From positions 124,001-188,000 of IMG/VR virus record IMGVR_UViG_3300029922_000001: a stretch of DNA of 64,000 nucleotides; one strand, 5' to 3'. A model generated the notes under the pieces. The model worked only from the letters and a program-made list of their open reading frames with translations, made no database searches and had not been told where the DNA came from. Below, one piece after another: positions 3,370 to 56,279 of this stretch. Each line of letters opens with the position of its first letter. Position 1 is the stretch's first letter. Made by a program: the position numbers and the translations under genes.

Positions 3370-6300
3370 ATGGATATTTTTGGTGCTTCATCAGATGATA
3401 CTGGCTTAGGTAATCAATACGTAGGCGAACCTCGAATTGCACGAGGATTATGTGTTATAGGTGGTTTAAATCAAAAAAGTACAGGCGGCATTCGAGGAAC
3501 TTTTGCTAAACTCACACCAGATGCAAAGGACGATTCAAGTGGTCAACAAATGAGTTTGAACTATTATATAGATAATCAAAATCGCCACAAAAACTCTAAA
3601 GAGACTACAACAATGGGACCAGAAGGTGGATATGGTTTATATGTTAATAATGCTTGTGGTGCGCCAATGTCCACTTTTGTATTTGGTGGAATATCTCCAG
3701 CAAGCATGGAGGCGAATCATCCTGTATTAAATCTTATTCAAGGACCACCATCTTCACAAAAATGTACATTTTCTGATGGCTCTATTCCCTATTATGATTC
3801 ACCTTATATAAATTTTAGTTATCAACCACAACAATATGGATCTACAGAGCAAGACATTGTGGACGATAGCGGTTTAGTAAACTTTAATGCATATTACATT
3901 AATAATAATCCACTTATTCCAACAATGCACAGTAATGGAATAACTTCTAATGGTGCTGCATTCGATTTATATTCGGCTTCTAAACCTTTAATGACTTATA
4001 ATATATGGCAGATAAATTATCCGTCAAGATTTCGAACATCAACCTTTGATATTAAAAATTATATTGAATATTCTCAAGATTTTGGTCCAATCATTAATAC
4101 GGCTACTGCATCCGCTACGGCATTAGCATATGATGGACCGATAATAAATCAATTTATATCAGAGAGGGGCGCTAAAGTTTCAGTATCTACACCTAAAGAT
4201 TTTGTTACCGTTGAAAGATTATATCCTATTAGTAATGATTTATTGTATTCTAATTTTCAAACAAACCCAGTGTTATCATATTACAGTTTAGTTAATTGTG
4301 ATGATGGTACACTAGATGCGCCATCTGCGATACCTGTTAGCATGACTGGCGCACAGAATTGCGGCTTTCAAATACACTTTGAGTGTTCTGGTATAGATTC
4401 TTCATATTCAGCATCAACAGGATCAGTTGCACCAAGTATCTCAATAAACTGGGGAGATCAAAATGTTCAATCAGCTACTTCTATTAATCAATTCCAACTT
4501 ATAATAAGTAGCCAAGGTACAGAATTAAGATATTTTAATCCTACCAAACAAATATATAACGTTGCGACTAATGAAGGCACACCAACTCCTGTGGACGCAA
4601 GATGGGTAAAGATTAAACTTCCAAATGGTAAATCTTTACTGCCTAATTCAGTAAGTTTTTCAGTATATGTTCATTATGCTGGACCTTATATGTTTGTTGG
4701 ATTTGGTGATTTAGGAAACTCTAGCGATGTTCAATGGTACTCACTAGGTCCTGTAGACAATGATGCTCAACAAAAAGGACAAAAGCTTAATTTAATGATC
4801 AGTGATCAGGCGACTATAGTTATTGGTATAGGGTACATGACTGCCCTTTTTCAATATGGTCCAATGACATTTAAGAATTATAATAAACAAAATATTACCA
4901 ACGCTACATCTATTGTCAATAAAGAATATTTAAATTATTTTGATTTTACGTTTACAGCCCCTGGAGACAAACAACAATATTTAGACACTAAGTTAATACA
5001 AAAAAACTTTTATAGTTTGGCATATACTGGGTTAACAAATACTACGAATGCAAAAGACACAAATATGAGTTATGCTCCAGACTGGAGAAATGCGACAAAT
5101 AATCAATTTTCTTTTGTTTGGAGAACGCCAATTACATTACTCCCAACTGGAGCAAGCCAGGTTGATCAAGTAGACCCATTGTATTATATTCAAGGAACAC
5201 TTCAATATAATACAACTTTTGAGGGACCTGTGTTTTACGAAATAACAAATAATATTACCCCATCTATACAGCCATTGCCGCCTTATATACCTTTAAATAT
5301 CAATGCTGGTAATAGGGTTATTGGTAGCACAACCAATGGAACAGATCAATATAATCCAAATTCATTAATAAATAATTTTTCATGGGGAGATATAAGCACT
5401 TATCTTACAAGGTGGAACATGTCTTATGCTTGTGAAGATAATGCAAATAGTTCATATTTATCAATGAGTGGGTCTGCTACATTTAAAGATATGGGATTAG
5501 ACATCCTTGGTAGAAAAATACTTACTGCTCTTGATGGTAACAGGATGACTATTTCTTTAGGTGCTGGTTATACTACTGATTATCCAGTTATATTTGGTCA
5601 AGGAGTAATAACTAAAGTTTCCACAGAAAGAGATGGAACTGGAACAATAACAACAATATCATTTGAAGATATTGGTACTTATTTACTAAGACACTGTAAA
5701 TTTAAAGATCCTTATATTTTTAGTGGTATGAAATATTGCCGTATTATACAAAGTATCTTAACTATACTTGGTTTTGATAAATATTATTCACAAAGACCAA
5801 ATTCCGTAAACAGTGCTTGGTCACAGGCTATGACATTAAGAGCTAATGCTTCTGGTTTACCTACTTCAATTAAGGGAGGTTCCATTCGTGTGGATTCTAA
5901 CACGGTGCCCTATAGTGTAATGAAAACTTTTTTACAGCTTATTATTGAAAAAGGTGCAACTCCTATATTTTGGTGGGACTGCGTTGATCAACTTTTCCGT
6001 ACTGAATGGAGGCAAGCTCCTGAATTTTTGGAAACTTTATATTTTGCCGGTTATAATAGTGGAAATAATAATGCATTATTACCCAACACTCAAAACACTC
6101 CAGACGATATTGTAAACAATTTAAATAGAGATTGGCAACACGGTGTGCTTGTTAAATCTTGGAAGTCAGACGTACAATATCAAAACTATATATATAAGCT
6201 TACCATTTGGGCTAAGGATTGTATTGGTAAATTAATGTCTTATAATTATTATGCTCCAAATGCTATTTCTCAAGACGTTTGGAATAAACTAAATAATTTA

Positions 6301-11848: not shown

Positions 11849-13190
11849 TTGAAGTTAGTCTATAAATAGACTTTATGATATTAGCTCTATTTCAACTATA
11901 CTGACTCATTAACATGTGGCATTAGCCACATGACCCACTTCCAGGGTTCTACTACGTCCTACTTTGGTAGGTCGTAGATACTTTATTGAATTCACTTTTA
12001 TTTTTGAATACTGACCATATCTACTCTTTGAGCAAATATTAGCTGATCCATTAGCATCTCTATGAATTTTATATTTACAATTAGAACAACAATAATTTCT
12101 ATTTATAACATTGTTAACATGTCCACAATTGGAACAGGTTTTACTAGAATAACTCTCGTTAATAATTTTAGTAGTCATACCGAACATTTTACCTTTTTCT
12201 TTAACATATTTAGAGAATTGTCCATGTGTCCATTGACTTATTTTTTGATTAACTTTCTTTCCTAAATTAACATTATCAGAAATATTTCTAACATCTCCAA
12301 TAGCTATGTTAGCCACTTTGTTTTCTTGGCAGAAGTTGATTACTTGTCTACTAGCTTTATGAAGTATATCTCTTTGTTGTCTTTTAAGTTTAGAAGAAGC
12401 TTTATTTTTAAGATCAGTTAATTTTTTATATCTTTTACTACCTGATTTACATCTGCTCAAGAGTTCTTCTAATGATTTATGTCTTTTATTTCTTAATTGT
12501 TTTACTGACCTTAGTTGTCTTCCTGATATTCCTATAGTTTTCCCGTCTTCGACGGTACAATAGGCAATATGAATTTCTCCCATGTCTATTCCTATCGTTT
12601 TAATCTGTCTCAATACATCTGATGGAATAATACCAGTATCCACAACTATATGAAGATAAAAGACGTTAGAATCTAAAACTAATTCAGCTATGTTAATATT
12701 TTTATTAATGAATTTACAAGGTAAATCTAATATTAAAGGTTCTGTAATTTTACCATTAGATAAATGTATTTTATTATTTTTAATTTTAATACCTAATTTT
12801 TTCCAGGTAATTGAAAATAGTTTTTTAGATTTATAAGGATATTCTGTTTTAATTTTATTATTTTCTTTTAATTCTTTTTCCCTATTTGATCTTGCAGACT
12901 CGATATTACTTTCTATTTTTTCCGCTATTGCCTGAATTGATTGACTATGGATATCATATTTTCCTTTAAATTCAAATTGTAATTCTCCTTTAGATAACCA
13001 TTTATCTTTTCTAGATTCAACATGAGCAGAGATCATATCAGAATAACATTGCCCAGCAATTTTTAATAAATGAGAACATTGTTTGATTTGTTTATTGTTT
13101 AGTGATAACTTAATAATATCAACCTTGCATGTTGTTTCTGAAAATTTTCGACCCATAATGGCACTTACTGTAAGTGCCTTATTAATTCCT
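11849..13190 (-). mobile_element. Solo-TnpB (IS1341-like) element without TnpA
   Basis: Inserted antisense in the structural operon. Right-end-like hairpin AGTCTA-TTTA-TAGACT followed by TTCAA (- strand, ending ~11849); palindrome GGCACTTAC-T-GTAAGTGCC at 13160-13178. Ends are approximate. Confidence 0.6.
11909..13156 (-). CDS. tnpB: TnpB RNA-guided endonuclease (IS200/IS605 OrfB family)
   Basis: RuvC-I IGIDMGE, RDILHKASR, RuvC-II region IAIGDV, Zn finger CSNC..CSNC, RuvC-III HRDANGSANI; 415 aa, K-rich. Confidence 0.9.
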   Translation of the reverse strand: MGRKFSETTCKVDIIKLSLNNKQIKQCSHLLKIAGQCYSDMISAHVESRKDKWLSKGELQFEFKGKYDIHSQSIQAIAEKIESNIESARSNREKELKENNKIKTEYPYKSKKLFSITWKKLGIKIKNNKIHLSNGKITEPLILDLPCKFINKNINIAELVLDSNVFYLHIVVDTGIIPSDVLRQIKTIGIDMGEIHIAYCTVEDGKTIGISGRQLRSVKQLRNKRHKSLEELLSRCKSGSKRYKKLTDLKNKASSKLKRQQRDILHKASRQVINFCQENKVANIAIGDVRNISDNVNLGKKVNQKISQWTHGQFSKYVKEKGKMFGMTTKIINESYSSKTCSNCGHVNNVINRNYCCSNCKYKIHRDANGSANICSKSRYGQYSKIKVNSIKYLRPTKVGRSRTLEVGHVANATC

Positions 13191-43416: not shown

Positions 43417-46203
43417 TTAAGATATGCTTCTATCACTTTGTATTGATGTAATACCAATATTTGCTGTATTAAAAAATAATATTACATAAAATACACCAGA
43501 ACTTCCAGTGCTATTAGTTCCAATCGACCAATGAACTACATTATTGTTTATACTGATTCTTGCACCATATGCTGTAGACAAAGTAGTACCATCTGTACCT
43601 GATTCATTAAAATTTTTCGCCAAATCATAATAAACACCGTTAACATATAACATAGCATTGTAATCACCGCTACTGTATGTGCTAATTGTTGTTTGTAATT
43701 CAGTAGCTAAATTAGTGGTGATATTAAATGGTGAAATTGTGAGATATCCAGTTGAGGCGCTAACCAAAGTAAAACTACGGCAATATGTTTTAGATCCACT
43801 AGCTCCACTATATGCAGAATAATCTGAAGAAACTGGATATCTTACAATGCCATTACGAACTTGTGCTTCTGTAGCACCTATACCAGCTATTAAACTAGTC
43901 AAACTTGAAGTCCATGCACTAGTATAAGGGGAAGTGGCAATAACCCTATAATATTCATCAGTAAAGTTTTCATATCCCCTTTCTGAATACAATGTACCCG
44001 TTAAAGCGATTGGATTGGCATATGTATTTGATTGAGTGCTAATACATGCTATTGCATCAGTTGGTGTACTGCCAAATGTACAAAAAGCTAATGCATTAGT
44101 ATTCGTCAAGTCTAGAGCAGTGGCTGTTGATGGTGTGGTGGCTCCTGTAGCCTTATATATGCTTGTGGTGATATAATTAAGCATAGAGCTTTGATTAGGG
44201 ACGCTAAGGCGAATTCTGACCTTTTGTGTGCCACCTGAACCAGTTCTTGTATATGGTGCATTATAATTAGGTGGTGTTACTGGTGGTAGACATATATTTT
44301 CACTAGCATCTAGATTAACACCTTGATTTGGAATACTTACATTGTCCAAGCCAGCAGGAGCAAACATTTTTGCTATAAATTGACTATTGTAGCATCTATT
44401 AAAAATAGCTGATGCTCCAGTACCACCAGATGCTTCAAAAGCAACATCAAATACGCTTTGGTATCCGTGATACTCTAATCCGCTAAGAAATTTTTGCATT
44501 GCCCCATTTCTAATTTTAACAATACTAGAAGCTATTGAAAATGTAGGTGTAGAACTTGCAGCAGTAACTGGATCACGCCAAAGTGGTAAGTAATTAGAAG
44601 TTCCAGCTTCTGGATGTATGAATTGATAAGCACTATAACCATCTAAGCTAGAACTATTAATACTAGCTACCGCAGATCCTTCTGCCCAAGCTAATCCATA
44701 TTTATTAACACTTGGCACGTTAAGAGTGTAAATGCCAGTTGATATAGGGCTATTCAAAGTAGAAGTCATGTCATAATCTAATTGAACTGTAGAAGTAAGT
44801 GTATTATCCTGTGTTTTAAGCTGAAGATCACCGTAGGTATATGGTCTAAAAGCTTTACCACAACGGAATGTATTAACTGGTGAATTCAAGTTAAAGCTTG
44901 TAACATCAGATGTATAGTAAGTGTTTATAATTGTTCCAGCGGGATATGATGTATTAGTCCAAGTACTTGATAAACCAGCCGATAATGTAGCGGTAAACAT
45001 GTAACTTGGGTTGATATTGTCAGTTAAGTTATTACCAGTTAATAAACCAGCTTGAGATCCAGATAATAACCATAAAGTTTGGTTGACATCATCAAAAGCG
45101 TTTGCTGCTAATGTACTAGATATCCATTCATTACCTACTCCATTAGCCCATTGATTACTTCCATCTGGATTTATTGGATATCCACCAAAATATCCATCAT
45201 CATAGTTGCTAGATCCAATATGTGGACTGCTTGGTGAGCCAATGGTTACTACATCACCGCTTGAATTAGTCCAAGCTGGAATACCACTAACAACAACAAG
45301 TGATTGACCGTTAGTGCCTATTGCTAATCGTTTATAAGTTGAAGTACCACTATCAAAATAGATAATATCGCCAGGTTGATCAAGTGAGGAACTTAAACTC
45401 GTTACAAGGTCTGCAATTAATAGCTTTTGACTACTACTAAATACAATTGGTTGGGTAAAAGTGTGGACACCAGTCCACGTTGGACTATAAGTTAAATCTA
45501 GTGATATAGTTCCAGTAGTGCTAATTGGTCCACCTGTAATACCATTACTAGTATTAATTAATGTTACAGACCCGCTACCTGTTCCAACCCATGATGTACC
45601 ATTGTAATATTGAAGCTGTTTAACTCCAGTATTACTGTTAAAATAAACACTACCTGGTGCTGTTGTAGCTGGTGGAGTAGTACTATTATATAGTGTTATA
45701 ACACTTGAACTAGACATAATAATAGATCCAGTCATAGTTCCACCAGATAATTGCAAATATCTAGCGTCTCCTGTGGTTTGAGTTAAAGAATCTAAATTGA
45801 TATTGTGCCATCCAGATCCATTAAAAATTCTAATAGAATCAGTAGATGTATTAAAGTATATTGCTCCAGTAATTTGATTTGATATAGAGGATTCATTAAG
45901 AGTGTTGGTAGACCATAATCCTAAACCAAATTCATTAGTGGTTAATCCTTGAAAAATCAAGTTGCCGCTCATGTAATCGCCAGATTTTAGAACGTAAAGA
46001 CCACCTGATATTGTCGCCAATGAAATTGTGATTTGATTAGTATCGGAATTTACTGCAACAACAATTCCGTCACCTTCTGCAACATTAACAGCACCAGTTA
46101 GTCCATTTAAAGATGCAACATACCCACCAGAAGACATTCCTCCAATATTGGCAACTATTCTTCTTTCTGGAACAATATATGCACCATCGTTAAAATTACT
46201 CAT
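43417..46203 (-). CDS. Tail fibre / virion structural protein
   Basis: YVLKSGDYMSGNL and YLQLSGGTMTGSI fibre repeats; GAIYFNTST..YNGTSW repeats; S/T/G-rich. Confidence 0.7.
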   Translation of the reverse strand: MSNFNDGAYIVPERRIVANIGGMSSGGYVASLNGLTGAVNVAEGDGIVVAVNSDTNQITISLATISGGLYVLKSGDYMSGNLIFQGLTTNEFGLGLWSTNTLNESSISNQITGAIYFNTSTDSIRIFNGSGWHNINLDSLTQTTGDARYLQLSGGTMTGSIIMSSSSVITLYNSTTPPATTAPGSVYFNSNTGVKQLQYYNGTSWVGTGSGSVTLINTSNGITGGPISTTGTISLDLTYSPTWTGVHTFTQPIVFSSSQKLLIADLVTSLSSSLDQPGDIIYFDSGTSTYKRLAIGTNGQSLVVVSGIPAWTNSSGDVVTIGSPSSPHIGSSNYDDGYFGGYPINPDGSNQWANGVGNEWISSTLAANAFDDVNQTLWLLSGSQAGLLTGNNLTDNINPSYMFTATLSAGLSSTWTNTSYPAGTIINTYYTSDVTSFNLNSPVNTFRCGKAFRPYTYGDLQLKTQDNTLTSTVQLDYDMTSTLNSPISTGIYTLNVPSVNKYGLAWAEGSAVASINSSSLDGYSAYQFIHPEAGTSNYLPLWRDPVTAASSTPTFSIASSIVKIRNGAMQKFLSGLEYHGYQSVFDVAFEASGGTGASAIFNRCYNSQFIAKMFAPAGLDNVSIPNQGVNLDASENICLPPVTPPNYNAPYTRTGSGGTQKVRIRLSVPNQSSMLNYITTSIYKATGATTPSTATALDLTNTNALAFCTFGSTPTDAIACISTQSNTYANPIALTGTLYSERGYENFTDEYYRVIATSPYTSAWTSSLTSLIAGIGATEAQVRNGIVRYPVSSDYSAYSGASGSKTYCRSFTLVSASTGYLTISPFNITTNLATELQTTISTYSSGDYNAMLYVNGVYYDLAKNFNESGTDGTTLSTAYGARISINNNVVHWSIGTNSTGSSGVFYVILFFNTANIGITSIQSDRSIS

Positions 46204-46344
46204 TATCTACTAATTCCAAATCATTAAGCTATAAACCTTAACCCAGTGTTTTGTACATTTTTTTTATAATAAGCAGGAAAAAAAATGCCAATACTGGAAC
46301 ATATTAACAGTGCTTGAGAAACAGCATAATAAACAGGAGTTACA

Positions 46345-46824
46345 ATGTCAAGATACCCAGAAAATTATTACGATACCGAATCAGGTTTACCTACTACAGT
46401 AAATAACGTTACAACCGATAAAATTTGGTTTAACGACTTGAAAGCACCAGTACAAGATATGTATGGTGATTTTCATATCGACCAAAATGTTGCAGAAAAC
46501 TTCTCCAACTGGCAAGCTTTATCAGCAGTTTTAACTACAACCGACTCTCTTATCAACAACTCAACTGGTATTTTAAGCCAAATGACTAATGGTGAATTCA
46601 CTGTTCCTAATCAAGAATGGTTCCTTTCAGTTAATCATATTACAGTTAATAGACTAGTGCGTAGACTTGGATTTATCAATAAATTATTATATAGATTCCA
46701 ACAACAAACTACAGCTTACATTGCCGACAGTATCAATGCTCCTGCAATTGGTCGTTACCCAGAAGGTTACAACGAACTTTGGGATACTCAACAGAAGTTT
46801 GGTACTCCAGAAAACGCAGAATAA
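46345..46824 (+). CDS. Hypothetical protein
   Basis: SD AGGAG; 159 aa; RYPE(N/G)Y motif near both termini. Confidence 0.75.
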   Translation: MSRYPENYYDTESGLPTTVNNVTTDKIWFNDLKAPVQDMYGDFHIDQNVAENFSNWQALSAVLTTTDSLINNSTGILSQMTNGEFTVPNQEWFLSVNHITVNRLVRRLGFINKLLYRFQQQTTAYIADSINAPAIGRYPEGYNELWDTQQKFGTPENAE

Positions 46825-46843: not shown

Positions 46844-46880
46844 AACAAAAAAGAGGGATTCTATTCCCTCTTTTTTTGTT
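46844..46880. terminator. Bidirectional terminator between convergent genes
   Basis: AACAAAAAAGAGGGA...TCCCTCTTTTTTTGTT inverted repeat with A and T tails. Confidence 0.85.
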
Positions 46881-47287
46881 TATTTATTTTTCTTCTTAGT
46901 TTTCTTTTCTTCTTTTGGAGTTTCGTATCCCAAAGCTGCCATTTCCTTTTCAGTATTACGATTAATTGCTGCTTCAACTGAGAACTTCTCACCGTATCTA
47001 GCTTTTAGCTTGGCAATATTCGCATCTAAGATTTTATCAAAATCAAAATTAGAAGCATCGCATAAAATAGCGGTATACCACATTAAGTCTCCGACTTCCT
47101 CAAAAAGATTTTCGTAATCTAGTGGTTTTTTGTAATAAATATGCTTTTTCATTTGATCTAAGAGTTCCGCAGATTCGGTACATAGACCAATGACAGCATG
47201 AAGTTGACGAATAGATGTTTTGTCATCAATCAAATCAGGTACACTTTCTGTACGCTTACAATTTTCGATATAGGTTTTAAATTCCAT
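46880..47287 (-). CDS. MazG-like all-alpha NTP pyrophosphohydrolase
   Basis: GLCTESAELLD..KK, EEVGDLMWY, NIAKLKARY. Confidence 0.88.
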   Translation of the reverse strand: MEFKTYIENCKRTESVPDLIDDKTSIRQLHAVIGLCTESAELLDQMKKHIYYKKPLDYENLFEEVGDLMWYTAILCDASNFDFDKILDANIAKLKARYGEKFSVEAAINRNTEKEMAALGYETPKEEKKTKKKNK

Positions 47288-47320
47288 AGCTTATTGTAGG
47301 TTTTTTTGTATAAAAAGAGC

Positions 47321-47839
47321 ATGAGTGTGTATTTTGTTGATTCGGAATTTTACGAAGACGGAGAAATAATAGATTTATTATCCATTGCTATCGTGGCAAA
47401 TGATAATAAACAATATTACGCTGTGAATTCTGATTTTAACTTCACTAGAGCCAATAAAAATAAATGGCTCAAGGAAAACGTCTTGAAACATATTGATTTG
47501 GAGGATAAAACAAATCAAAGAAGTAAAAAACAAATTAAATCAGATATTTTAAAATTTATTGGTGATGATAAATCCCCGAAATTTGTGTCAGATTATTGCA
47601 GCTATGATTATATTGTGTTATGTCAAATATTTGGTAAAATGATTGATCTGCCTGATAATTTTCCTATGTATTGTAATGATCTACAAATGTTAAAGAAGAT
47701 AGTTGGTGCTAAGGATTCTGAATTGCCAACTTTGCCAAACGAACATCATGCACTTAATGATGCCTGTCAAGTACGCGAACAATGGTTATTCTTAGAAAAG
47801 CGTTTTCAGGAAAAATTCAAACAAAAACTGGTTTTTTAA
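47321..47839 (+). CDS. DEDDh 3'-5' exoribonuclease (Rv2179c/RNase AS-like)
   Basis: YFVDSEFYEDG, WLKENVL, YDYIVLCQIFGKMIDLP, HHALNDA. Start at ATG 47321, 6 nt after TATAAA. Confidence 0.85.
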   Translation: MSVYFVDSEFYEDGEIIDLLSIAIVANDNKQYYAVNSDFNFTRANKNKWLKENVLKHIDLEDKTNQRSKKQIKSDILKFIGDDKSPKFVSDYCSYDYIVLCQIFGKMIDLPDNFPMYCNDLQMLKKIVGAKDSELPTLPNEHHALNDACQVREQWLFLEKRFQEKFKQKLVF

Positions 47840-47847
47840 GAATACCC

Positions 47848-47877
47848 TTGACAAACTTCAGAGATTGTGGATATAAT
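47848..47877 (+). promoter_or_regulatory. Consensus sigma70 promoter of the RNA array
   Basis: TTGACA (47848-47853), 18-nt spacer, TATAAT (47872-47877). Confidence 0.8.
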
Positions 47878-48046: not shown

Positions 48047-48117
48047 GGGGATGTAGCTCGACGGTCGAGTTAGAGCCTTTTAAGCTCAAGGCGTGGGTTC
48101 GATTCCCTCCGTCCTCA
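48047..48117 (+). tRNA. tRNA-Lys(TTT), atypical D arm
   Basis: Acceptor GGGGATG/CGTCCTC; anticodon arm GAGC-CTTTTAA-GCTC; T loop TTCGATT; no encoded CCA. Confidence 0.85.
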
Positions 48118-48127
48118 CCGAGAATAT

Positions 48128-48198
48128 GGGAAGTTAGTTCAATGGTAGAGCGGGAGAATCTAAATCTCCTAATGAGGGTTCGATTCCCTCACTTCCCA
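48128..48198 (+). tRNA. Amber suppressor-type tRNA (anticodon CTA)
   Basis: Acceptor GGGAAGT/ACTTCCC; D arm GTTC/GAGC; anticodon arm GGAGA-ATCTAAA-TCTCC; T arm GAGGG-TTCGATT-CCCTC. Confidence 0.88.
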
Positions 48199-48211
48199 CC
48201 GAGATAAATAT

Positions 48212-48284
48212 GGGAATAAAGCATAAAGGGTGATGCAGTTGGCTCTTAACCTTCAGAACCTGGGCTCGACCCCCGGTGTTCCCA
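48212..48284 (+). tRNA. Degenerate tRNA-Lys(CTT)
   Basis: Acceptor GGGAATA/TGTTCCC; loop CTCTTAA; anticodon stem with two T-T mismatches, A8 and T loop CTCGACC. Confidence 0.65.
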
Positions 48285-48294
48285 CGAGAAATAT

Positions 48295-48367
48295 GGGGAT
48301 ATAACTCAATTGGTAGAGTGGCAGACTCTTAATCTGTAAGTTTGGGGTTCAAGTCCCCATGTCCCTA
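48295..48367 (+). tRNA. tRNA-Lys(CTT)
   Basis: GGGGATA/TGTCCCT; ACTC/GAGT; GCAGA-CTCTTAA-TCTGT; TGGGG-TTCAAGT-CCCCA. Confidence 0.92.
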
Positions 48368-48376
48368 CGAGAGCAA

Positions 48377-48701
48377 TTTGAATTTTGGGAAGTTGGCTTA
48401 GAAACAGCTATCTTATAATGAGTGTCAAGTGGAATGCATCAGGACGAATATAGGTATGAGAAATCTGAATAATCTATCGTGCGCGGTAGATTAATACTGA
48501 AATTCGGTTGGTACTGATGTCGTGTCTCAGCTATCCCAGCATGAGGACGTAGAACCACAGGGGAAGGACAAGTGCAGTATTAATAATATGTTTGGTAGGC
48601 GAAGCTACCGAACTAAGTAGAGGAAGGTAAGGGATAGGATATTCTACAATGTTATTAATGACCCTTAGAGACTTTGGCGTAGTAGCACACCAAAATTCAA
48701 A
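48377..48701 (+). ncRNA. ~325-nt structured RNA containing a split mimic of 23S rRNA H43/H44 (GTPase-associated centre)
   Basis: Perfect 12-bp terminal helix TTTGAATTTTGG/CCAAAATTCAAA. 48387-48423 joined to 48677-48691 aligns without gaps to 23S nt 1054-1105 (reference recalled from memory). Several internal helices; same CGAGA trailer as the tRNAs. Confidence 0.8.
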
Positions 48702-48712
48702 ACGAGATGTAA

Positions 48713-48808
48713 GGGGGTATAGCTTAGTGGTTAAAGCTGGAGACTTTTGGAGTATTTCATGGAATATTGCAAAATCTCTAGACTAGGGTTCGATTCCCTG
48801 TGCCCCTA
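48713..48808 (+). tRNA. tRNA-Lys(TTT)-like with a 24-nt insert in the anticodon loop
   Basis: GGGGGTA/TGCCCCT; GCTT/AAGC; GGAGA-CTTTT-[48749-48772]-AA-TCTCT; TAGGG-TTCGATT-CCCTG. Confidence 0.75.
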
Positions 48809-48846
48809 CCGAGATTAAGACAAGTTTTATATGTATAAACACAAGT

Positions 48847-49176
48847 ATGTGCTGTAATAATTTTGAATATAATATACATCTAGGTCACCCTGTAGACTTA
48901 GAAATTGCCAAATACAAAACAATTAAACTTCTTCCTCGTCACCGAAAAATAAGTCCCTTAATTACGTGGATTATTAGAGATGATGATGGAACAGTACTGG
49001 GCACTACAGAAACTCATGGTTTAGAAATGAATGATCCAGAAATTAAGGGGATTTTACAAGAAGCTAAAGAAGCTTATCAATATAGAAATAGACTTTATGT
49101 TAAGTATGATACATGTAAAGATGAGTACGATAAGCTTGCCGTATTAACTACAATAAGATATGATTATCATACTTGA
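48847..49176 (+). CDS. Hypothetical protein
   Basis: 109 aa; TGTATAAA-7nt-ATG start. Confidence 0.65.
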   Translation: MCCNNFEYNIHLGHPVDLEIAKYKTIKLLPRHRKISPLITWIIRDDDGTVLGTTETHGLEMNDPEIKGILQEAKEAYQYRNRLYVKYDTCKDEYDKLAVLTTIRYDYHT

Positions 49177-50020
49177 CGATGCTGCAAACCAAGATATTAA
49201 TGATACAGTATCAATGATCGCTAGTAGAATGGGAATGAATAACGTATATCATATTCCAGATCGTGACGATTTAACATACGATGAACTTCTATGGCATATT
49301 CCCACAAAAGATGATCCTGAAAAGGCAATTTGGATCGGTTACATTCCTTTACAAGACAAATACGATGATCTTTATCAAGAATTGAAGAATAAAAACATTT
49401 ATTTAGTTAATGATCCTAAACAACATCAAAAAGCTATGGAATTTGACTTGTTTTATCCTATTATCAGAGAATACACACCACAAAGCGTAACTATAACTAA
49501 TATTGTGTCTTGTAAAACTGTTGCTAAAATTTTAGGATTTCCCATATTTGTAAAAGGTGCAATAAAATCAGAAAAAGAAAAAGGTATTAAAGCTTGTAAA
49601 GCAGACAATTTAGAAGAACTCAAAACTTTAGTAGATCCAATTTTGAAACAAACTTATAGGTCTAGAAATAAAGCTGTTTGCCGTAAATATGTCCCATTAA
49701 AATATGTTAAAAAAACTCCTGGTGATTTTCCTATAGGTAGAGAATATCGTTATTTGATGTATTGTAATAAAATTATAACAAGTGGCTATTATTGGGGCGT
49801 AGAAGATGAGTTATCTAAATTAAGTCATTCTGAAAAACAAGAAGTTGATAATTTAGCTATTATGATTTCTAAAAAATTACAAATACCTTTAATTGCTATA
49901 GATATTGGACAGCTTGATTCTGGAGAATGGATTGTAATTGAAGTTGGCGATCCCCAATGTTGTGGAGTATCACATTCGATGGCTTTTGAATTTTGGAATA
50001 AAATAGTTGTATATGAATAA
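49160..50020 (+). CDS. ATP-grasp domain protein (R2K/DUF4343-like)
   Basis: FPIFVKGAIKS, REYRY, IAIDIGQLDSGEWIVIEVGDPQCCG. Confidence 0.8.
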   Translation: MIIILDDAANQDINDTVSMIASRMGMNNVYHIPDRDDLTYDELLWHIPTKDDPEKAIWIGYIPLQDKYDDLYQELKNKNIYLVNDPKQHQKAMEFDLFYPIIREYTPQSVTITNIVSCKTVAKILGFPIFVKGAIKSEKEKGIKACKADNLEELKTLVDPILKQTYRSRNKAVCRKYVPLKYVKKTPGDFPIGREYRYLMYCNKIITSGYYWGVEDELSKLSHSEKQEVDNLAIMISKKLQIPLIAIDIGQLDSGEWIVIEVGDPQCCGVSHSMAFEFWNKIVVYE

Positions 50021-50369: not shown

Positions 50370-50531
50370 TCACATGCAGTGGATTTTTAACTTTGTAAAA
50401 TAAAATAGTTACTGTATAAATAAAACTGAGTACTATCCAAGCAAAATATTATCAAAAACAATGTCGTAGATCCTACGCGGAATCGGTTGTTTTTAAATAA
50501 TATTAGTCAACGCAGAAAACTCAGGAAATAT

Positions 50532-51458
50532 ATGAGTAAAAACTTAAATATAATTAAAACAAGCATTCCTTATATACCAATTGGAAGGAAATTACTATTT
50601 GTTGATCATACAACAAAAGGGGACACGAAATATTATTCTCGGGATATATCTTGTAAAGCCTGGAGAAAAAAATGTAGGGAGGGAGTCCCTACTATGATAG
50701 TCGAACATGAATCTTTATTTATACAAACTATAACAATAGGAACTGTTGCAACAGCGACTAGGCAAGAAGTTTATAGTTGTGAATATGATTTAGAAGAAAG
50801 AATAGATGCGCAAGCTCGCCAAGGTATCAATATAGAAGAAGATACGCTAATATTTGAAGTACTAGAAACTGGTGCTAGAAAAACATTAACAAGAGAAACA
50901 TTAACTTGTTCTGATTTAATGACTGCTATTGGTCTTTTATGGAATCATTTAGTTCCGCCAAATAAAATAGTAATGTCACCTAAAAAGTTTTATGAACTAT
51001 TAGATGATCCACGTCTTAGATTCTTTACGGAAATATCCGAAGAAGAAAAGAAAACTAATCCAGTATGGGGAACTTTTAAAGAATTCCCTATATATGTATC
51101 TGCTCTTTTGGGTAATAAAGTTTTTGTGTTAAGCAATCCTGAATTAGTTGGTGTTATACCAATTGACAAAGATGTTGATGTAATAACCGAATTTGAAATT
51201 AGAAAAATTCGTGATGAAAATCTTTATTATGAAATTCTTGGGGCAGGAGTAATTAATGATTACTCTATTGTTGTGATTAATGTTATTGGTGCAGACAAAG
51301 ATATAGAAACTGTTAATACTTTTGGCGCAACTCTTACTCCTTTAGGTGCTGCTAAGACATTATCAGGAGACACAAAGAAAAAACAAATAATCTCTGATCA
51401 AACATGTACTAAGGACACGCAAGAAGGAGAATCACTAGATAAAATAAAGGGAAATTAA
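50532..51458 (+). CDS. HK97-fold major-capsid-like paralog
   Basis: YDLEERIDAQARQGINIEEDTLIF (spine-helix-like), KIVMSPKKFYEL, GTFKEFPIYVS, NPELVGVIPIDKDVDV and YEILGAGVIN resemble large-phage MCP/encapsulin-fold motifs. Judged by eye. Confidence 0.6.
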   Translation: MSKNLNIIKTSIPYIPIGRKLLFVDHTTKGDTKYYSRDISCKAWRKKCREGVPTMIVEHESLFIQTITIGTVATATRQEVYSCEYDLEERIDAQARQGINIEEDTLIFEVLETGARKTLTRETLTCSDLMTAIGLLWNHLVPPNKIVMSPKKFYELLDDPRLRFFTEISEEEKKTNPVWGTFKEFPIYVSALLGNKVFVLSNPELVGVIPIDKDVDVITEFEIRKIRDENLYYEILGAGVINDYSIVVINVIGADKDIETVNTFGATLTPLGAAKTLSGDTKKKQIISDQTCTKDTQEGESLDKIKGN

Positions 51459-51908: not shown

Positions 51909-52703
51909 ATGAAACAAGATAAAGATGCTTTAGGCAACAGAATGAAGGATCATGAACACCGAACACGGATTTTACTTCCGCGTAGAACAAATACAATGAT
52001 TAGGCTTGATGGAAAAGCTTTTCATACCTTTACAAAAGGATTCAAACGTCCTTTTGATACGGATTTAATGAATATCATGAATCAAACAGCATTAGAAACA
52101 TGTTCTACAATTCAAGGTGCCAAGTTTGCTTATGTTCAATCTGATGAAATTACTATTTTGGTTACAGATTACGAAACTGATGCATGGTTTGATGGTAATA
52201 TCCAGAAGATGACATCAATTTCAGCTTCTTATGCAACATCTGCGTTCAATGCTCATTATGGTAAATACATTTACGATCAAAATCCTAGCGAGTTTGACCC
52301 CTTAAAGGTTAAAAAAGCTAATTTTGATAGCCGTGTATGGACTTTAGCTGATCCTAATGAAGTTATTAATGTTTTAATTTGGAGACAACAAGATTGTGTA
52401 AAAAATAGTATTTCTATGGCAGCACAATCAATGTTCTCTCAGAAAGAATTGCAAAATAAGCATTCTGACGACATGCAAGAGATGATGTGGCAAAAAGGCG
52501 TCAATTGGAATGATTATACTGTTGGCGAAAAGCGTGGTCGTTTTATCGAAAAGATTTCCACACAAAAGGATATCGAATACATAGATAAGCGAACTGGTGA
52601 AAAACATATCAAAGAAGGTGTTATTCGATCTAAATGGAAAGTCGTAGAACCACCAACTTTTTCAACAGACAAAGACTTTATTCGTCGTTTCATGCCCATT
52701 TAA
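51909..52703 (+). CDS. Thg1-like tRNA(His) guanylyltransferase / 3'-5' polymerase
   Basis: IRLDGKAFHTFT, AYVQSDEIT, WFDGNIQKM, FDSRV, WRQQDCVKNSI. Confidence 0.93.
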   Translation: MKQDKDALGNRMKDHEHRTRILLPRRTNTMIRLDGKAFHTFTKGFKRPFDTDLMNIMNQTALETCSTIQGAKFAYVQSDEITILVTDYETDAWFDGNIQKMTSISASYATSAFNAHYGKYIYDQNPSEFDPLKVKKANFDSRVWTLADPNEVINVLIWRQQDCVKNSISMAAQSMFSQKELQNKHSDDMQEMMWQKGVNWNDYTVGEKRGRFIEKISTQKDIEYIDKRTGEKHIKEGVIRSKWKVVEPPTFSTDKDFIRRFMPI

Positions 52704-53099: not shown

Positions 53100-54268
53100 A
53101 GGAATCTTAATATATACATAAGAATTTATATTTATGCTTATAAATAGATCTATTCAATATAGATTATATCCTAACAATAAACAAATTAAATTATTATCTA
53201 ATAATTTGGAAGGTTGTAGACTACTTTATAATCAAATGTTGAATCAAAGAAAAGAAGGATGGGAACAAGATAAGCAATCCTTTTCTTGTTATGATCAGCA
53301 AAAATATTTTAAAGATTATCTAGATAAACTAGAATATAATATTCATGCTCAAGTTAAACAAAATGTTGCCGTTAGAGTTGACTTAGCTTTTAAGGCTTTC
53401 TTTCGTAGAATTAAAAATAAAGAAAATCCAGGTTATCCTAGATTTAAATCTTTTGGTAGATATGATTCATTCACTTATCCTCAAACTGATTACGGATATA
53501 AAATTAAAGATAAACAAATATATTTATGTAAGATAGGTAATGTTAAAGTTGTTATTCATAAACAAATCACTGGATTTATCAAAACATGTACTATCAAGAA
53601 AGAAAGTGATAGATGGTTTGTTATTTTTACTTATGAAGCAGAATCAACATCTTATGAATCTTCTACTAATTTAGAGATTGGTATTGATGTAGGTTTAAAA
53701 TCTTTTGCAGTGTTCTCAGATAATACAACTATTGATAATCCTAGATTCTTTAAACAAGAAGAAAAGAATATTGGAAGATTACAAAGACGAAAAGAAAAAG
53801 CTAATGGTAATCAAAAACAAAAATTAAAGAAAGCTATTCAAAAACGTCATGCTAAAGTTAAAAATAAGAGAAAAGATTTTTGTCATAAGCTTTCGAGATC
53901 AATCGTCAATAAATATAAAATTATTTGCATTGAAGATTTAAACATTAATCAAATGAAAGAAAACATGAGATATTTATCAAAAAGTATTCATGATGCTTCT
54001 TGGAAACTATTCTTGAACTATCTAATCTATAAAGCGGAAGAAGCTGGTAGATTATTAATTCAAGTCAATCCTGCGTATACTACCCAGGATTGTAGTAAAT
54101 GTGGTTATAGAGTTAAAAAGAAGCTTTCAGATCGTATTCATAATTGTCCTAATTGTGGACTCTCTATGGATCGTGATCTAAATGCTTCCCTAAACATTTT
54201 GAGAATAGGATTATATTCTCTTGGTATTAAATCCATAGAAGATTCTTTTAATTAAGAATAGTAATCAC
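53100..54268 (+). mobile_element. Solo-TnpB (IS1341-like) element
   Basis: No TnpA. The 3' end AGAAG-ATTCTT-TTAATT-AAGAAT-AGTAATCAC resembles an IS605 right-end hairpin ending in TCAC (54265-54268). Left end not defined. Confidence 0.6.
53134..54255 (+). CDS. tnpB: TnpB RNA-guided endonuclease (IS200/IS605 OrfB), intact D-E-D triad
   Basis: HTH YRLYPN, GYPRFKS, IGIDVGL, ICIEDL, CSKC..CPNC, DRDLNASLNI. Confidence 0.95.
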   Translation: MLINRSIQYRLYPNNKQIKLLSNNLEGCRLLYNQMLNQRKEGWEQDKQSFSCYDQQKYFKDYLDKLEYNIHAQVKQNVAVRVDLAFKAFFRRIKNKENPGYPRFKSFGRYDSFTYPQTDYGYKIKDKQIYLCKIGNVKVVIHKQITGFIKTCTIKKESDRWFVIFTYEAESTSYESSTNLEIGIDVGLKSFAVFSDNTTIDNPRFFKQEEKNIGRLQRRKEKANGNQKQKLKKAIQKRHAKVKNKRKDFCHKLSRSIVNKYKIICIEDLNINQMKENMRYLSKSIHDASWKLFLNYLIYKAEEAGRLLIQVNPAYTTQDCSKCGYRVKKKLSDRIHNCPNCGLSMDRDLNASLNILRIGLYSLGIKSIEDSFN

Positions 54269-55337: not shown

Positions 55338-56279
55338 TTACTCTTCGTCGGTAACATATTTTTTATGAGCAGGGTTCTCTTTTTTAAAGATTCTAGCGTA
55401 ATATTCTTCATAAGTATTAAAAACTTCTCTTGTAGTTACAACAAAGTAAATCTTTTCAATTTGAGATTCTTGGTTTTCTTCAAAATATCTTAATACAGCA
55501 GAAATTTGAGCTAAAGCACCTTGATAAACATTAAGAGTTCCGCAATCCATAGGGGTAATAACTAAACTCTTGCATTGTATACTGTCAGCTAACAATAATG
55601 AACGGTTAGTTGCAGTAGAAATGTATTTTTCTTCTGTTAATCCTCCACCACCTGATACAATAGCGTGGGCAACACTCTTGAAAGGTAATTCTGGAATATT
55701 AGATGCATCAGTGTTGTAAACATGACCCATTTTAATAGGAACACCATTTTCATTAATTCTATTAAGTTGATTTTGTAGTTTAAAACCACTTAAAGTTTGC
55801 AATACTGGATCAAGAATTTCTAATAGGTTGTTATTTGGATATACAAGCATATCAGCTTTAACCTTATAGGGAGAAGGGACTAAATGAACAGAAATTTTCA
55901 CATTGTCAATACTAGGCTTGTAGGCTTGTGGTTTTTCATCATCATTTTTACGATAAGGTTGATAATCTTCAACGACTTCATTACCAATCACAACGTCTTC
56001 TTCGGAATTCCAATCGTACATGCTGTGTAAGAAAACACAGTTCTCATATTTACCGCGACAATTTTCATCCCACTTTTCATTATTGATATAATGTTGTTTA
56101 TTTGGGACAATATCATTAAAAACACCAATTAGAGGATTGACAAACTTTTTATTGTCTTCATCAAATTCTTCTTCCACCATGTTTTTAAAAACACAATCAT
56201 ATTGTGAATTGTCAAATATTACATAAAATGGACATTCTGCACATGCCTGTTGTATAGAAAGTATTTTTATTTTTTTCAT
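55338..56279 (-). CDS. Protein with C-terminal divergent macrodomain
   Basis: KADMLVYPNNNL, GHVYNTDA, KSVAHAIV, KSLVITPMDCG and IEKIYFVV follow macrodomain motif order; the canonical NAAN and GGG are altered. Confidence 0.75.
   Translation of the reverse strand: MKKIKILSIQQACAECPFYVIFDNSQYDCVFKNMVEEEFDEDNKKFVNPLIGVFNDIVPNKQHYINNEKWDENCRGKYENCVFLHSMYDWNSEEDVVIGNEVVEDYQPYRKNDDEKPQAYKPSIDNVKISVHLVPSPYKVKADMLVYPNNNLLEILDPVLQTLSGFKLQNQLNRINENGVPIKMGHVYNTDASNIPELPFKSVAHAIVSGGGGLTEEKYISTATNRSLLLADSIQCKSLVITPMDCGTLNVYQGALAQISAVLRYFEENQESQIEKIYFVVTTREVFNTYEEYYARIFKKENPAHKKYVTDEE

What the first reader, a model, noticed from the sequence alone, without database searches (positions are those of the whole stretch)
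48713..48808. tRNA whose anticodon is masked by a 24-nt hairpin insert
Seen: insert 48749-48772 extends the anticodon arm (TTTTG/CAAAA, then AGTATTT/GAATATT around CATG) and sequesters the TTT anticodon. It is far too short for a self-splicing intron and sits at or near the archaeal/eukaryal 37/38 position. Inference: a pre-tRNA needing a protein endonuclease and ligase, a latent tRNA activated by cleavage, or a nuclease-proof aminoacylatable mimic.
Basis: partly seen in the sequence, partly recalled or inferred. Interest (0 to 1): 0.65.

Follow-up and report, generated by a model that had tools for sequence, protein, structure and literature searches.

The report
Phage lysine tRNA with hairpin insert
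A giant peat-soil phage carries a spare lysine tRNA gene whose anticodon loop is interrupted by a unique 24-base hairpin, so the RNA cannot read codons as made; it is most likely a disabled copy, less likely an unusual protein-spliced intron.

Summary
Positions 48713-48808(+) are a tRNA (Rfam 55.4 bits), and 24 extra bases (48749-48772) turn the anticodon loop into a rod of about 17 bp. Deleting exactly those 24 bases gives a canonical 72-nt tRNA-Lys(UUU) with loop CUUUUAA. That sequence is 83% identical to 13 uninterrupted phage tRNA-Lys sequences from 46 other IMG/VR contigs.

By homology the insert lies between nucleotides 36 and 37, not 37/38. No bulge-helix-bulge motif forms in any register. 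The hairpin is not random: only 0.4% of random 24-mers fold as stably, and the antisense strand folds at -6.4 against -13.2 kcal/mol.

The insert is a singleton. I found no other insert-bearing copy in IMG/VR, JGI metagenomes or GTDB genomes, and it is not a repeat. It is fixed in the one known strain, a 441-kb megaphage from peat. Expression could not be tested. The 97 kb of genome I could read holds no RNase III, RNA ligase or splicing endonuclease. An intact tRNA-Lys(UUU) lies 666 bp upstream.

- **Most likely (0.45):** an insertion-disabled, non-decoding paralogue.
- **Main rival (0.25):** a real intron. The excised piece would be a hairpin with a 2-nt 3' overhang, the geometry of an RNase III cut followed by 3'-OH/5'-P ligation.
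- **Precedent:** the 'enigmatic' tRNA introns of Lak megaphages.

The parts
47848..47877 (+). Sigma-70-type promoter (TTGACA-18-TATAAT, 12 of 12 matches), about 170 nt upstream of the first tRNA; the likely promoter of the tRNA array
48047..48119 (+). Intact tRNA-Lys(UUU) with loop CUUUUAA; it makes the target redundant for decoding
   Evidence: 54.5 bits
48128..48200 (+). Amber-suppressor tRNA with anticodon CUA (ARAGORN labels it 'Pyl')
   Evidence: 66.7 bits
48212..48284 (+). Atypical tRNA with anticodon CUU: two U.U mismatches in the anticodon stem and C54 in the T loop. Rfam calls it; ARAGORN does not
   Evidence: 45 bits; no call
48295..48368 (+). tRNA-Lys(CUU)
   Evidence: 68.9 bits
48713..48748 (+). 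5' part of the target tRNA: acceptor strand, D arm, the 5' strand of the anticodon stem, then C32 U33 U34 U35 U36
48749..48772 (+). 24-nt insert GGAGUAUUUCAUGGAAUAUUGCAA. It forms a hairpin closed by G48749-C48770, plus a 2-nt 3' tail (AA) that pairs with U35 and U36
   Evidence: unique in the window and in the collections
48773..48808 (+). 3' part of the target tRNA: A37, A38, the 3' strand of the anticodon stem, variable loop, T arm, acceptor strand and A73. It is followed by CC (48809-48810) and the GAGA trailer shared with the other tRNAs
48739..48779 (+). Extended anticodon arm (5 bp, bulged C, 5 bp, G.G mismatch, 7 bp, CAUG loop), -13.2 kcal/mol
47306..47839 (+). Context gene: Rv2179c-like 3'-5' exoribonuclease just upstream of the array
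   Evidence: PF16473; PDB 4hec and 4oke, about 1e-22
51909..52703 (+). Context gene: bacterial-type Thg1-like protein, the family that repairs tRNA 5' ends
   Evidence: PF04446, 1e-30; PDB 4kgk, 1.8e-51

Best explanation
**What it is.** This is a paralogous tRNA-Lys(UUU) gene in a five-gene tRNA array of a 441-kb bacterial megaphage from peat. The array holds Lys-UUU, a CUA suppressor, an odd CUU tRNA, Lys-CUU and this gene. The gene has acquired a lineage-specific 24-nt insertion between nucleotides 36 and 37.

**What the RNA looks like.** It is probably transcribed from the array's promoter and trimmed at its ends like its neighbours. That is inferred from the same A-CC-GAGA trailer and the intact acceptor, D and T arms. 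In this RNA the insert folds back on U33-U36. The 7-nt anticodon loop becomes a nearly continuous 17-bp rod capped by a CAUG tetraloop.

**What it can and cannot do.**
- As made, it cannot pair with a codon.
- By established knowledge of bacterial LysRS identity elements (the anticodon bases and A73), it should not be charged.
- It has no ribozyme and no bulge-helix-bulge motif.
- AAA decoding is covered by the intact copy at 48047.

**Most likely reading.** It is an insertion-disabled, non-decoding copy that is tolerated because it is redundant. It is not an archaeal-type intron.

**Shown:** the identity of the gene, the position of the insert, the fold, the uniqueness and the redundancy. **Inferred:** that the RNA is made, and that it is not matured.
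For: - **Identity.** Removing 48749-48772 gives a canonical 72-nt tRNA-Lys(UUU) that is 60/72 identical to uninterrupted phage tRNA-Lys genes. The acceptor and T arms are identical, and the D-stem and anticodon-stem differences are compensated.
- **Uniqueness.** None of the 46 other IMG/VR contigs holding this tRNA family has an insert. Searches aimed at insert-bearing copies found only the source contig in IMG/VR and JGI metagenomes, and nothing in GTDB genomes.
- **No BHB.** Manual enumeration on the fold finds no bulge-helix-bulge motif.
- **No machinery seen.** Pfam, PHROGs and NCBIfam scans of the window ORFs, plus precomputed Pfam calls on the flanking loci, show no RNase III, RNA ligase, RtcB, Pnkp or EndA. 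Together these cover contig positions 117,370-214,387.
- **Redundancy.** A second, intact tRNA-Lys(UUU) sits in the same array.
- **A second atypical gene.** The tRNA at 48212 is also atypical, so the array tolerates deviant copies.
Against: - The hairpin is far more stable than a random insertion would give (p about 0.004). It is also strand-specific: it has G.U pairs and no A.C mismatches, and folds at -13.2 against -6.4 kcal/mol for the antisense strand. This suggests RNA-level selection, or an origin as a structured element.
- The rest of the gene shows no decay (55.4 bits despite the insert) and keeps the array's processing trailer.
- The excised piece would have exact RNase III-product geometry.
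- Lak megaphages show that interrupted tRNA genes can be conserved (PMC6784885).
- Only 22% of the genome was inspected for enzymes.
Confidence: 0.45

Rival explanations
1. **A genuine protein-spliced intron of a new, bacterial type.** A dsRNA-specific RNase III-type enzyme (host or phage) would cut the rod with the usual 2-bp stagger: after U36 on the 5' strand and after A48772 on the 3' strand. That would release a 24-nt hairpin with a 2-nt 3' overhang. It would leave U36-3'OH and 5'P-A37 held together by the tRNA body. An ATP-dependent RNA ligase of the T4 Rnl1/Rnl2 type would then seal them into the loop CUUUUAA. Until then the anticodon would be shielded, giving a latent tRNA-Lys.
For: - The homology-defined insert boundaries, laid on the fold, give exactly a hairpin closed by G48749-C48770 with a 3' AA overhang. 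The exon side has a U35U36 3' overhang. This is the RNase III signature, and the argument is geometric.
- The hairpin is non-random and sense-strand-specific, and the tRNA body is intact.
- tRNA-Lys(UUU) is the classic target of anticodon nucleases and of phage ligase repair: PrrC with T4 Rnl1 (PMC10264068), and PARIS AriB with T5 tRNA-Lys (PMC11464382).
- Lak megaphages carry conserved, non-ribozyme tRNA introns whose mechanism is unknown (PMC6784885).
- The locus is flanked by tRNA-maintenance genes, a Thg1-like protein and a 3'-5' exoribonuclease.
Against: - No spliced RNA was seen; the RNA run does not cover the locus.
- No RNase III or ligase gene lies in the 97 kb inspected.
- No second example occurs in this genome region or in any collection.
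- A 2-bp stagger would arise by chance in roughly one case in seven (my estimate, not computed).
- No such pathway is known in bacteria or phages.
- An intact copy already supplies tRNA-Lys(UUU).
Confidence: 0.25
2. **A functional tRNA-shaped RNA that is never spliced.** The L-shaped body (acceptor, D and T arms, CCA end) would be kept for binding tRNA-handling proteins, and the anticodon loop would be replaced by a rod. It could act as a decoy or sponge for a host tRNA-directed defence nuclease or sensor. It could also be a scaffold for the phage's own tRNA enzymes.
For: - The tRNA body is intact and the hairpin is stable and strand-specific.
- The array looks specialised for lysine tRNAs plus a suppressor, and tRNA repair genes sit beside it.
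- Elsewhere in IMG/VR, a family of ~120-nt tRNA-like RNAs in phage tRNA arrays keeps acceptor, D and T arms with compensatory changes, but has a hairpin in place of the anticodon loop. The loci are L022, L032, L027 and L029. Non-decoding tRNA-shaped RNAs in phage tRNA arrays therefore exist.
Against: - From established knowledge, the known anticodon nucleases against tRNA-Lys (PrrC, AriB) read the anticodon loop. A rod would not mimic their substrate.
- There is no conservation to show selection.
- The insert has no homology to the L022-type family.
Confidence: 0.15
3. **An archaeal or eukaryal-type intron.** It would be cut at a bulge-helix-bulge motif by a splicing endonuclease and joined by RtcB.
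For: - It is short and sits in the anticodon loop, and the anticodon pairs with the insert.
- A viral tRNA with a relaxed BHB does exist in IMG/VR for comparison: L116, tRNA-Ser(UGA), with a 33-nt insert at 37/38.
Against: - The position is 36/37 by homology.
- No 3-nt bulges separated by 4 bp can be drawn in either the 36/37 or the 37/38 register. The arm has only a 1-nt bulge on the wrong strand and a G.G mismatch.
- The phage looks bacterial. It has a perfect sigma-70 promoter. Its Thg1-like protein is closest to the Thg1-like protein of PDB entry 4kgk, which from memory is from Bacillus thuringiensis. It also carries DnaK, DnaJ, GyrA/B and TnpB.
- No EndA or RtcB was seen.
Confidence: 0.02
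4. **A small mobile or repeat element (MITE, REP or IS-end hairpin), or an assembly artefact, landed in the gene.**
For: The insert is palindromic, and two TnpB (IS605 OrfB) genes are in the window.
Against: - There is no other copy within 3 mismatches in the 64-kb window.
- The 18-mer core occurs elsewhere in IMG/VR only inside unrelated coding sequences.
- The same sequence is present in an independent peat sample with no differences.
- The source contig is recorded under two JGI scaffold names, Ga0302280_1000004 and Ga0311363_10000008.
Confidence: 0.05

Closest known systems
'Enigmatic' tRNA introns of Lak megaphages (Devoto et al. 2019, Nat Microbiol, PMC6784885)
   Same: Both are tRNA genes of a very large phage interrupted in the anticodon loop by a non-ribozyme insert. 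Neither has an Rfam match, and the removal mechanism is unknown in both. [quoted passage not shown]
   Different: - Lak inserts are 79-114 nt, are predicted at 37/38 and contain tRNA-like T-arm motifs. They are identical across many genomes.
- This insert is a bare 24-nt hairpin at 36/37 and is known from one strain only.
Archaeal and eukaryal BHB tRNA introns (splicing endonuclease plus RtcB or Trl1)
   Same: Both are short, sit in the anticodon loop, are protein-dependent by necessity and have the anticodon paired with the insert.
   Different: Here there is no bulge-helix-bulge, the position is one nucleotide off the canonical site, and the context is a bacterial virus.
Group I introns in bacterial and phage tRNA anticodon loops (e.g. 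cyanobacterial tRNA-Leu(UAA); Azoarcus tRNA-Ile)
   Same: Both interrupt a bacterial-type tRNA in the anticodon loop.
   Different: Those are self-splicing ribozymes of about 200 nt or more. 24 nt cannot hold a catalytic core, and there is no Rfam match.
T4 PrrC / Pnkp / Rnl1 break-and-repair of tRNA-Lys(UUU), and nuclease-resistant phage tRNA-Lys (T5 against PARIS AriB)
   Same: The tRNA species and the site of conflict (the anticodon loop of tRNA-Lys) are the same. Phage-encoded spare lysine tRNAs and tRNA repair enzymes occur in both (PMC10264068, PMC11464382).
   Different: Those systems use ordinary 7-nt loops with point differences. None has an inserted hairpin.
RNase III processing hairpins (T7 R1.1-type sites, pre-rRNA stems)
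   Same: Both are an irregular helix of about 17-20 bp with a tetraloop. The homology-defined excision product is a hairpin with a 2-nt 3' overhang.
   Different: No RNase III site is known to sit inside a tRNA and be followed by religation. Cleavage was not tested here.

Membership tests
tRNA (Rfam RF00005) | Cloverleaf with acceptor, D, anticodon and T arms, scoring above the gathering threshold | tested here: met
   55.4 bits against a threshold of 29, model positions 1-71, with a 27-nt stretch in place of 3 loop positions
tRNA-Lys(UUU), phage family with acceptor GGGGGUA/UGCCCCU-A73 | Homology over the whole body and a CUUUUAA anticodon loop once the insert is removed | tested here: met
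   60/72 identical to the nearest of 13 distinct uninterrupted sequences in 46 other IMG/VR contigs. Removing 48749-48772 is the only contiguous deletion that restores CUUUUAA
tRNA-Lys(UUU), functional decoder | Free 7-nt anticodon loop; charged by LysRS | tested here: not met
   U33-U36 are paired in the minimum-energy and centroid folds. Charging cannot be tested with these tools
Archaeal/eukaryal BHB intron | Two 3-nt bulges separated by a 4-bp helix, each carrying a splice site | tested here: not met
   The fold shows a 1-nt 5' bulge and a 1x1 G.G mismatch only. Manual enumeration of the 36/37 and 37/38 registers gives C-A or U-C clashes in the would-be central helix
Archaeal/eukaryal BHB intron | Canonical position 37/38 | tested here: not met
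   Homology places the insert at 36/37. A 37/38 cut would give the loop CUUUUGA with G37, which no family member has
Archaeal/eukaryal BHB intron | Splicing endonuclease and RtcB/Trl1 ligase available | tested here: inconclusive
   None in contig 117,370-214,387. The other 78% of the genome and the host were not seen
Group I self-splicing intron | Conserved catalytic core of about 200 nt or more | tested here: not met
   The insert is 24 nt, and there is no Rfam intron match
Lak-type megaphage tRNA intron | Non-ribozyme insert in the anticodon loop of a huge-phage tRNA gene | tested here: met
   441,498-bp phage contig; insert in the anticodon loop
Lak-type megaphage tRNA intron | 79-114 nt insert containing a tRNA-like T arm, conserved across genomes | tested here: not met
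   The insert is 24 nt with no T-arm motif, and no second genome carries it
Repeat or mobile hairpin element (REP/MITE) | Multiple copies in the genome | tested here: not met
   A single copy in the 64-kb window at up to 3 mismatches. The exact 18-mer occurs once in the 441-kb contig
RNase III substrate | Cleavage of both strands with a 2-nt 3' overhang | not testable with these tools
   Only the geometry fits. No cleavage data exist

The most novel reading that the evidence does not exclude
A bacterial-virus tRNA splicing pathway that uses neither a ribozyme nor a BHB endonuclease. The 24-nt hairpin would be excised by an RNase III-type staggered cut, and the nick between U36 and A37 would be sealed by a phage or host 3'-OH/5'-P RNA ligase. 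This would yield a tRNA-Lys(UUU) that is kept latent, with its anticodon shielded from anticodon nucleases, until it is processed.
Probability: 0.2. Interest if true: 0.8.

Novelty: new variant of a known kind. Interest (0 to 1): 0.4.

Why it matters
If the hairpin is removed in vivo, this would be the simplest example yet of the unexplained tRNA introns of megaphages. Its geometry immediately suggests the enzymes involved, RNase III and an Rnl-type ligase, and that makes a seven-year-old open question directly testable in vitro.

It would also add 'masked' lysine tRNAs to the phage-host conflict over tRNA-Lys (PrrC, PARIS). If the hairpin is not removed, the gene is an ordinary casualty of redundancy in a phage tRNA array. 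It then matters mainly as a warning that tRNA finders mislabel such genes; ARAGORN called this one tRNA-Gln.

Tried and rejected
1. **Conservation.**
   - An exact-flank search with a variable gap in IMG/VR found only the source contig.
   - A 3'-half search gave 46 other contigs, all uninterrupted.
   - A family-specific search for any 8-38-nt insert found only the source contig in JGI metagenomes and nothing in GTDB genomes.
   - A generic CUUUUG...CAAAA + T-loop pattern in IMG/VR gave only chance hits.
   - blastn against cultured phages gave nothing useful.
2. **Repeat or mobile element.** The 24-mer is unique in the window. The other IMG/VR hits to its 18-mer core lie in unrelated coding DNA.
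3. **Expression and splicing.** One RNA run holds contigs of a related strain, but only at 45979-46817 and 50799-51010. Nothing covers the tRNA, and no joints were found.
5. **A divergent strain.** The 521,591-bp ENA contig is identical to the window where I could read it, apart from one 18-nt gap. It is therefore uninformative.
6. **Genome walk for enzymes and further tRNAs.**
   - Two look-ups failed because the called start codons differ.
   - The walk covered contig positions 117,370-214,387. It found no ligase, RNase III or EndA and no further tRNA.
   - I stopped with four look-ups left because the walk had run into giant structural-type ORFs.
7. **Unknown neighbouring ORFs.** PHROGs, NCBIfam, PDB sequence search and the ESM Atlas gave no RNA enzyme.
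8. **Is the 327-nt spacer decayed tRNA copies?** Local alignments scored no better than shuffles.
9. **BHB.** Rejected by enumerating the registers.
10. **ARAGORN's Gln(UUG) call.** Rejected on homology.

Full report
**1. What the window is**

The window is part of a 441,498-bp viral contig from a peat metagenome, IMGVR_UViG_3300029922_000001 = Ga0302280_1000004. Window position 1 is about contig position 124,001.

Several features point to a bacterial host:
- giant ORFs of 2,843, 3,178 and 1,525 aa;
- helicases and an HK97-fold capsid-like gene;
- DnaJ and two TnpB genes in the window, and DnaK and gyrase A/B just beyond it;
- a perfect sigma-70 promoter.

No cultured phage resembles it.

**2. 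Checking the observation**

Five tRNA genes lie at 48047-48810 on the + strand:
- tRNA-Lys(UUU), 48047-48119
- a CUA amber suppressor, 48128-48200
- an atypical CUU tRNA that only Rfam calls, 48212-48284
- tRNA-Lys(CUU), 48295-48368
- the target, 48713-48808, after a 327-nt ORF-free stretch

The target scores 55.4 bits against Rfam tRNA, with 27 nt where the model has 3.

The arm 48739-48779 folds as follows:
- a 5-bp anticodon stem
- a bulged C32
- UUUUG/CAAAA
- a G.G mismatch
- AGUAUUU/GAAUAUU
- a CAUG loop

Its energy is -13.2 kcal/mol, z = -3.8.

I tested the insert itself. Only 0.4% of shuffled or genome-composition random 24-mers placed at that site give an arm as stable. The antisense strand folds at only -6.4 kcal/mol, because two pairs are G.U.

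Mere pairing of the anticodon is not remarkable. It happens with 33-44% of random inserts.

**3. What gene it is and where the insert sits**

The 3' half of the gene (23 nt) occurs exactly in 46 other IMG/VR contigs besides the source contig. In all but one truncated case the gene there is an uninterrupted tRNA-Lys(UUU). It has the same acceptor stem (GGGGGUA/UGCCCCU, A73) and the loop CUUUUAA.

Deleting 48749-48772 from the target gives a 72-nt sequence that is 60/72 identical to the nearest of these. The differences in the D stem and anticodon stem are compensated. This is the only contiguous 24-nt deletion that restores CUUUUAA.

The insert therefore lies between U36 and A37. That is one position 5' of the canonical archaeal/eukaryal site. 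ARAGORN's label 'tRNA-Gln (ttg)' is an artefact of the insert.

**4. What it is not**

- **Not a ribozyme intron.** It is 24 nt and has no Rfam match.
- **Not a BHB intron.**
  - The motif needs a 3-nt bulge on the 3' strand next to the anticodon stem, then a 4-bp helix, then a 3-nt bulge on the 5' strand.
  - In both the 36/37 and the 37/38 registers the would-be central helix starts with C-A or U-C clashes.
  - The real fold has only a 1-nt bulge on the 5' strand and a G.G mismatch.
  - For contrast, tRNA-Ser(UGA) at L116:5436-5555 in another IMG/VR contig has a 33-nt insert at 37/38. It shows a 4-bp CUUG/CAAG helix and a 3-nt 3' bulge, which is a relaxed BHB.
- **Not a repeat element.** The 24-mer is unique in the window at up to 3 mismatches. 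The exact 18-mer core occurs once in the 441-kb contig, and elsewhere only inside unrelated coding DNA.
- **Not an assembly error.**
  - The source run has the insert.
  - A contig from an independent peat sample (X2, 48569-48778) has it with no difference.
  - No deletion variant or joint was seen.

**5. Conservation**

There is none to measure. The searches for insert-bearing relatives are listed under Tried and rejected; in brief:
- Searches that would find any family member with an 8-38-nt insert returned only the source contig in IMG/VR and JGI metagenomes, and nothing in 185,579 species genomes.
- A looser pattern gave only chance hits.
- The 521,591-bp ENA contig that carries the same genes is identical to the window where I could read it, apart from one 18-nt gap. 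It is the same strain.

**6. Expression**

Expression could not be tested. The one RNA run that holds this phage (a 97.6%-identical strain) has contigs only at 45979-46817 and 50799-51010. Contigs cannot show small RNAs in any case.

Indirect points in favour of transcription and end-processing:
- a 12/12 sigma-70 promoter 170 nt upstream of the array;
- the trailer A-C(C)-GAGA, which follows all five tRNAs including the target.

**7. Machinery**

I scanned the window ORFs against Pfam, PHROGs and NCBIfam. I then walked the contig, so that positions 117,370-214,387 were covered.

No RNase III, RNA ligase, RtcB, Pnkp or splicing endonuclease appeared, and there was no further tRNA.

RNA-related genes that are present:
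- an Rv2179c-like 3'-5' exoribonuclease directly upstream of the array;
- a bacterial-type Thg1-like protein 3 kb downstream (PDB 4kgk, 1.8e-51);
- a Macro-domain protein;
- just beyond the window, a PIN_4 nuclease next to PhoH and an RNase HII.

The phage clearly invests in tRNA maintenance, but nothing seen is a splicing enzyme. 78% of the genome and the host remain unseen.

**8. How it most likely works**

- **As transcribed.** The RNA is a tRNA-shaped molecule whose anticodon loop is a rod. It cannot pair with a codon. Bacterial LysRS depends on the anticodon bases (established knowledge, not tested here), so it should not be charged. This makes the 'aminoacylatable mimic' idea unlikely.
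- **Best explanation (0.45).** An intact tRNA-Lys(UUU) sits 666 bp upstream, so the parsimonious reading is an insertion-disabled copy tolerated by redundancy.
- **What argues against simple decay.** The hairpin is non-random and strand-specific, and the rest of the gene is pristine.
- **A geometric coincidence.** With the homology-defined boundaries, the excised piece is a hairpin closed by G48749-C48770 with a 2-nt 3' overhang (AA). The exon side has a U35U36 3' overhang. That is the signature of an RNase III cut. It would leave 3'-OH and 5'-P ends in the anticodon loop, the kind of substrate T4 Rnl1 seals in tRNA-Lys (PMC10264068).
- **Main rival (0.25).** I therefore rank 'RNase III-type excision plus Rnl-type ligation' as the main rival. 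The stagger alone would arise by chance in roughly one case in seven, which is my estimate and was not computed.
- **Third reading (0.15).** The RNA is functional without splicing.
  - For: I found a family of ~120-nt tRNA-like RNAs in other phage tRNA arrays (L022, L032, L027, L029). They have covarying acceptor and T stems and a hairpin where the anticodon loop should be.
  - Against: the known tRNA-Lys nucleases read the loop.

**9. Comparison with what is known**

- **Closest precedent.** Devoto et al. (2019) reported 'enigmatic', highly conserved introns in Lak megaphage tRNAs (PMC6784885). Their preprint suggested that such introns may be common in large phage genomes (10.1101/356790).
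- **How those differ.** Those inserts are 79-114 nt, are predicted at 37/38 and contain T-arm-like motifs. The present insert is a bare 24-nt hairpin at 36/37 in a single strain.
- **Verdict on novelty.** It is at most a new variant of a known but unexplained kind.
- **Literature.** I found no paper describing a short hairpin insert in a phage tRNA anticodon loop.

**10. Verdict**

| Question | Answer |
|---|---|
| Observation | Confirmed |
| Interest | 0.4 |
| Most novel reading not excluded | A new protein-dependent splicing route that gives a latent tRNA-Lys; probability about 0.2 |

Noticed in passing
window 48377-48703 (+): A 327-nt ORF-free stretch lies between tRNA-Lys(CUU) and the target. 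Its ends pair perfectly over 12 bp (UUUGAAUUUUGG/CCAAAAUUCAAA) and are followed by the same A-C-GAGA trailer as the tRNAs. It folds at -86.8 kcal/mol (z = -3.1) and has UNCG- and GNRA-type hairpins. It has no Rfam match at E<1 and is not decayed tRNA copies. It may be a structured RNA that is processed like a tRNA.
   Followed up: partly
window 48128-48200 (+) and whole window: The phage encodes an amber-suppressor tRNA (CUA). None of the 37 stop-to-stop frames of 120 codons or more in the window ends in TAG (TAA 33, TGA 4, TAG 0). Reading TAG through does not lengthen them meaningfully. TAG may be recoded elsewhere in the genome, or simply avoided.
   Followed up: partly
window 48212-48284 (+): An atypical tRNA with anticodon CUU has two U.U mismatches in the anticodon stem and C54 in place of U54. 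Rfam calls it at 45 bits and ARAGORN misses it. Each lysine anticodon in the array thus has one ordinary copy and one deviant copy.
   Followed up: no
window 48117-48130, 48198-48215, 48284-48298, 48367-48380, 48808-48820: All five tRNAs are followed by A73-C(C)-GAGA, and most are preceded by AUAU. The CCA end is not fully encoded. This looks like a shared processing signal specific to this phage.
   Followed up: no
window 46880-47287 (-), 47306-47839 (+), 49160-50020 (+), 51909-52703 (+), 55338-56279 (-): Around the tRNA array lie a MazG-like pyrophosphohydrolase, an Rv2179c-like 3'-5' exoribonuclease, an R2K-clade ATP-grasp enzyme, a bacterial-type Thg1-like protein and a Macro-domain protein. 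Together they may form a tRNA and nucleotide maintenance neighbourhood.
   Followed up: partly
window 11909-13156 (-) and 53134-54255 (+): Two TnpB (IS605 OrfB / Cas12f-like) genes lie in the 64-kb window.
   Followed up: no
window 50487-51458 (+): An HK97-fold major-capsid-like protein (PHROG 2522, 3e-13) sits among non-structural genes, next to the tRNA and repair genes.
   Followed up: no
L022:2314-2435(-), L032:4482-4602(-), L027:854-976(+), L029:1023-1141(+): Four other IMG/VR phage tRNA arrays hold a ~120-nt tRNA-like RNA. Its acceptor and T stems covary (11 pairs with compensatory changes). It has a hairpin where the anticodon loop should be, a conserved CAGCAA, a second hairpin TTCCAT..AAGGA and an encoded CCA. 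Rfam does not call it a tRNA at the gathering score.
   Followed up: partly
L116:5436-5555 (+): A tRNA-Ser(UGA) in a 76.7-kb viral contig has a 33-nt insert at 37/38. It forms a 4-bp CUUG/CAAG helix with a 3-nt 3' bulge (a relaxed BHB) and a perfect 9-bp inner hairpin. The arm folds at -20.3 kcal/mol, z = -6.2.
   Followed up: partly
L040:~4560-4600 (-): Only the 3' half of the tRNA-Lys(UUU) family gene is present, joined to unrelated sequence. It may be an integration (att) remnant.
   Followed up: no
L091 / L207 (ENA ERZ27248709 k141_1408874): The same phage strain is assembled as a 521,591-bp contig in ENA. The 441,498-bp JGI contig may therefore be incomplete, or the ENA contig may carry a terminal repeat.
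   Followed up: no
L207:11757-14114 (+), just beyond the window's right end: A PIN_4-domain nuclease lies next to a PhoH ATPase. The PhoH protein also has a faint LAGLIDADG hit, so it may contain an intein. RNase HII, DnaK, a NUMOD3 endonuclease and gyrase A/B follow.
   Followed up: no
window 46350-46817: A 2025 peat metatranscriptome run holds a contig 97.6% identical to this stretch (11 differences in 468 nt). A related strain therefore exists and may be transcribed, although DNA carry-over is not excluded.
   Followed up: no
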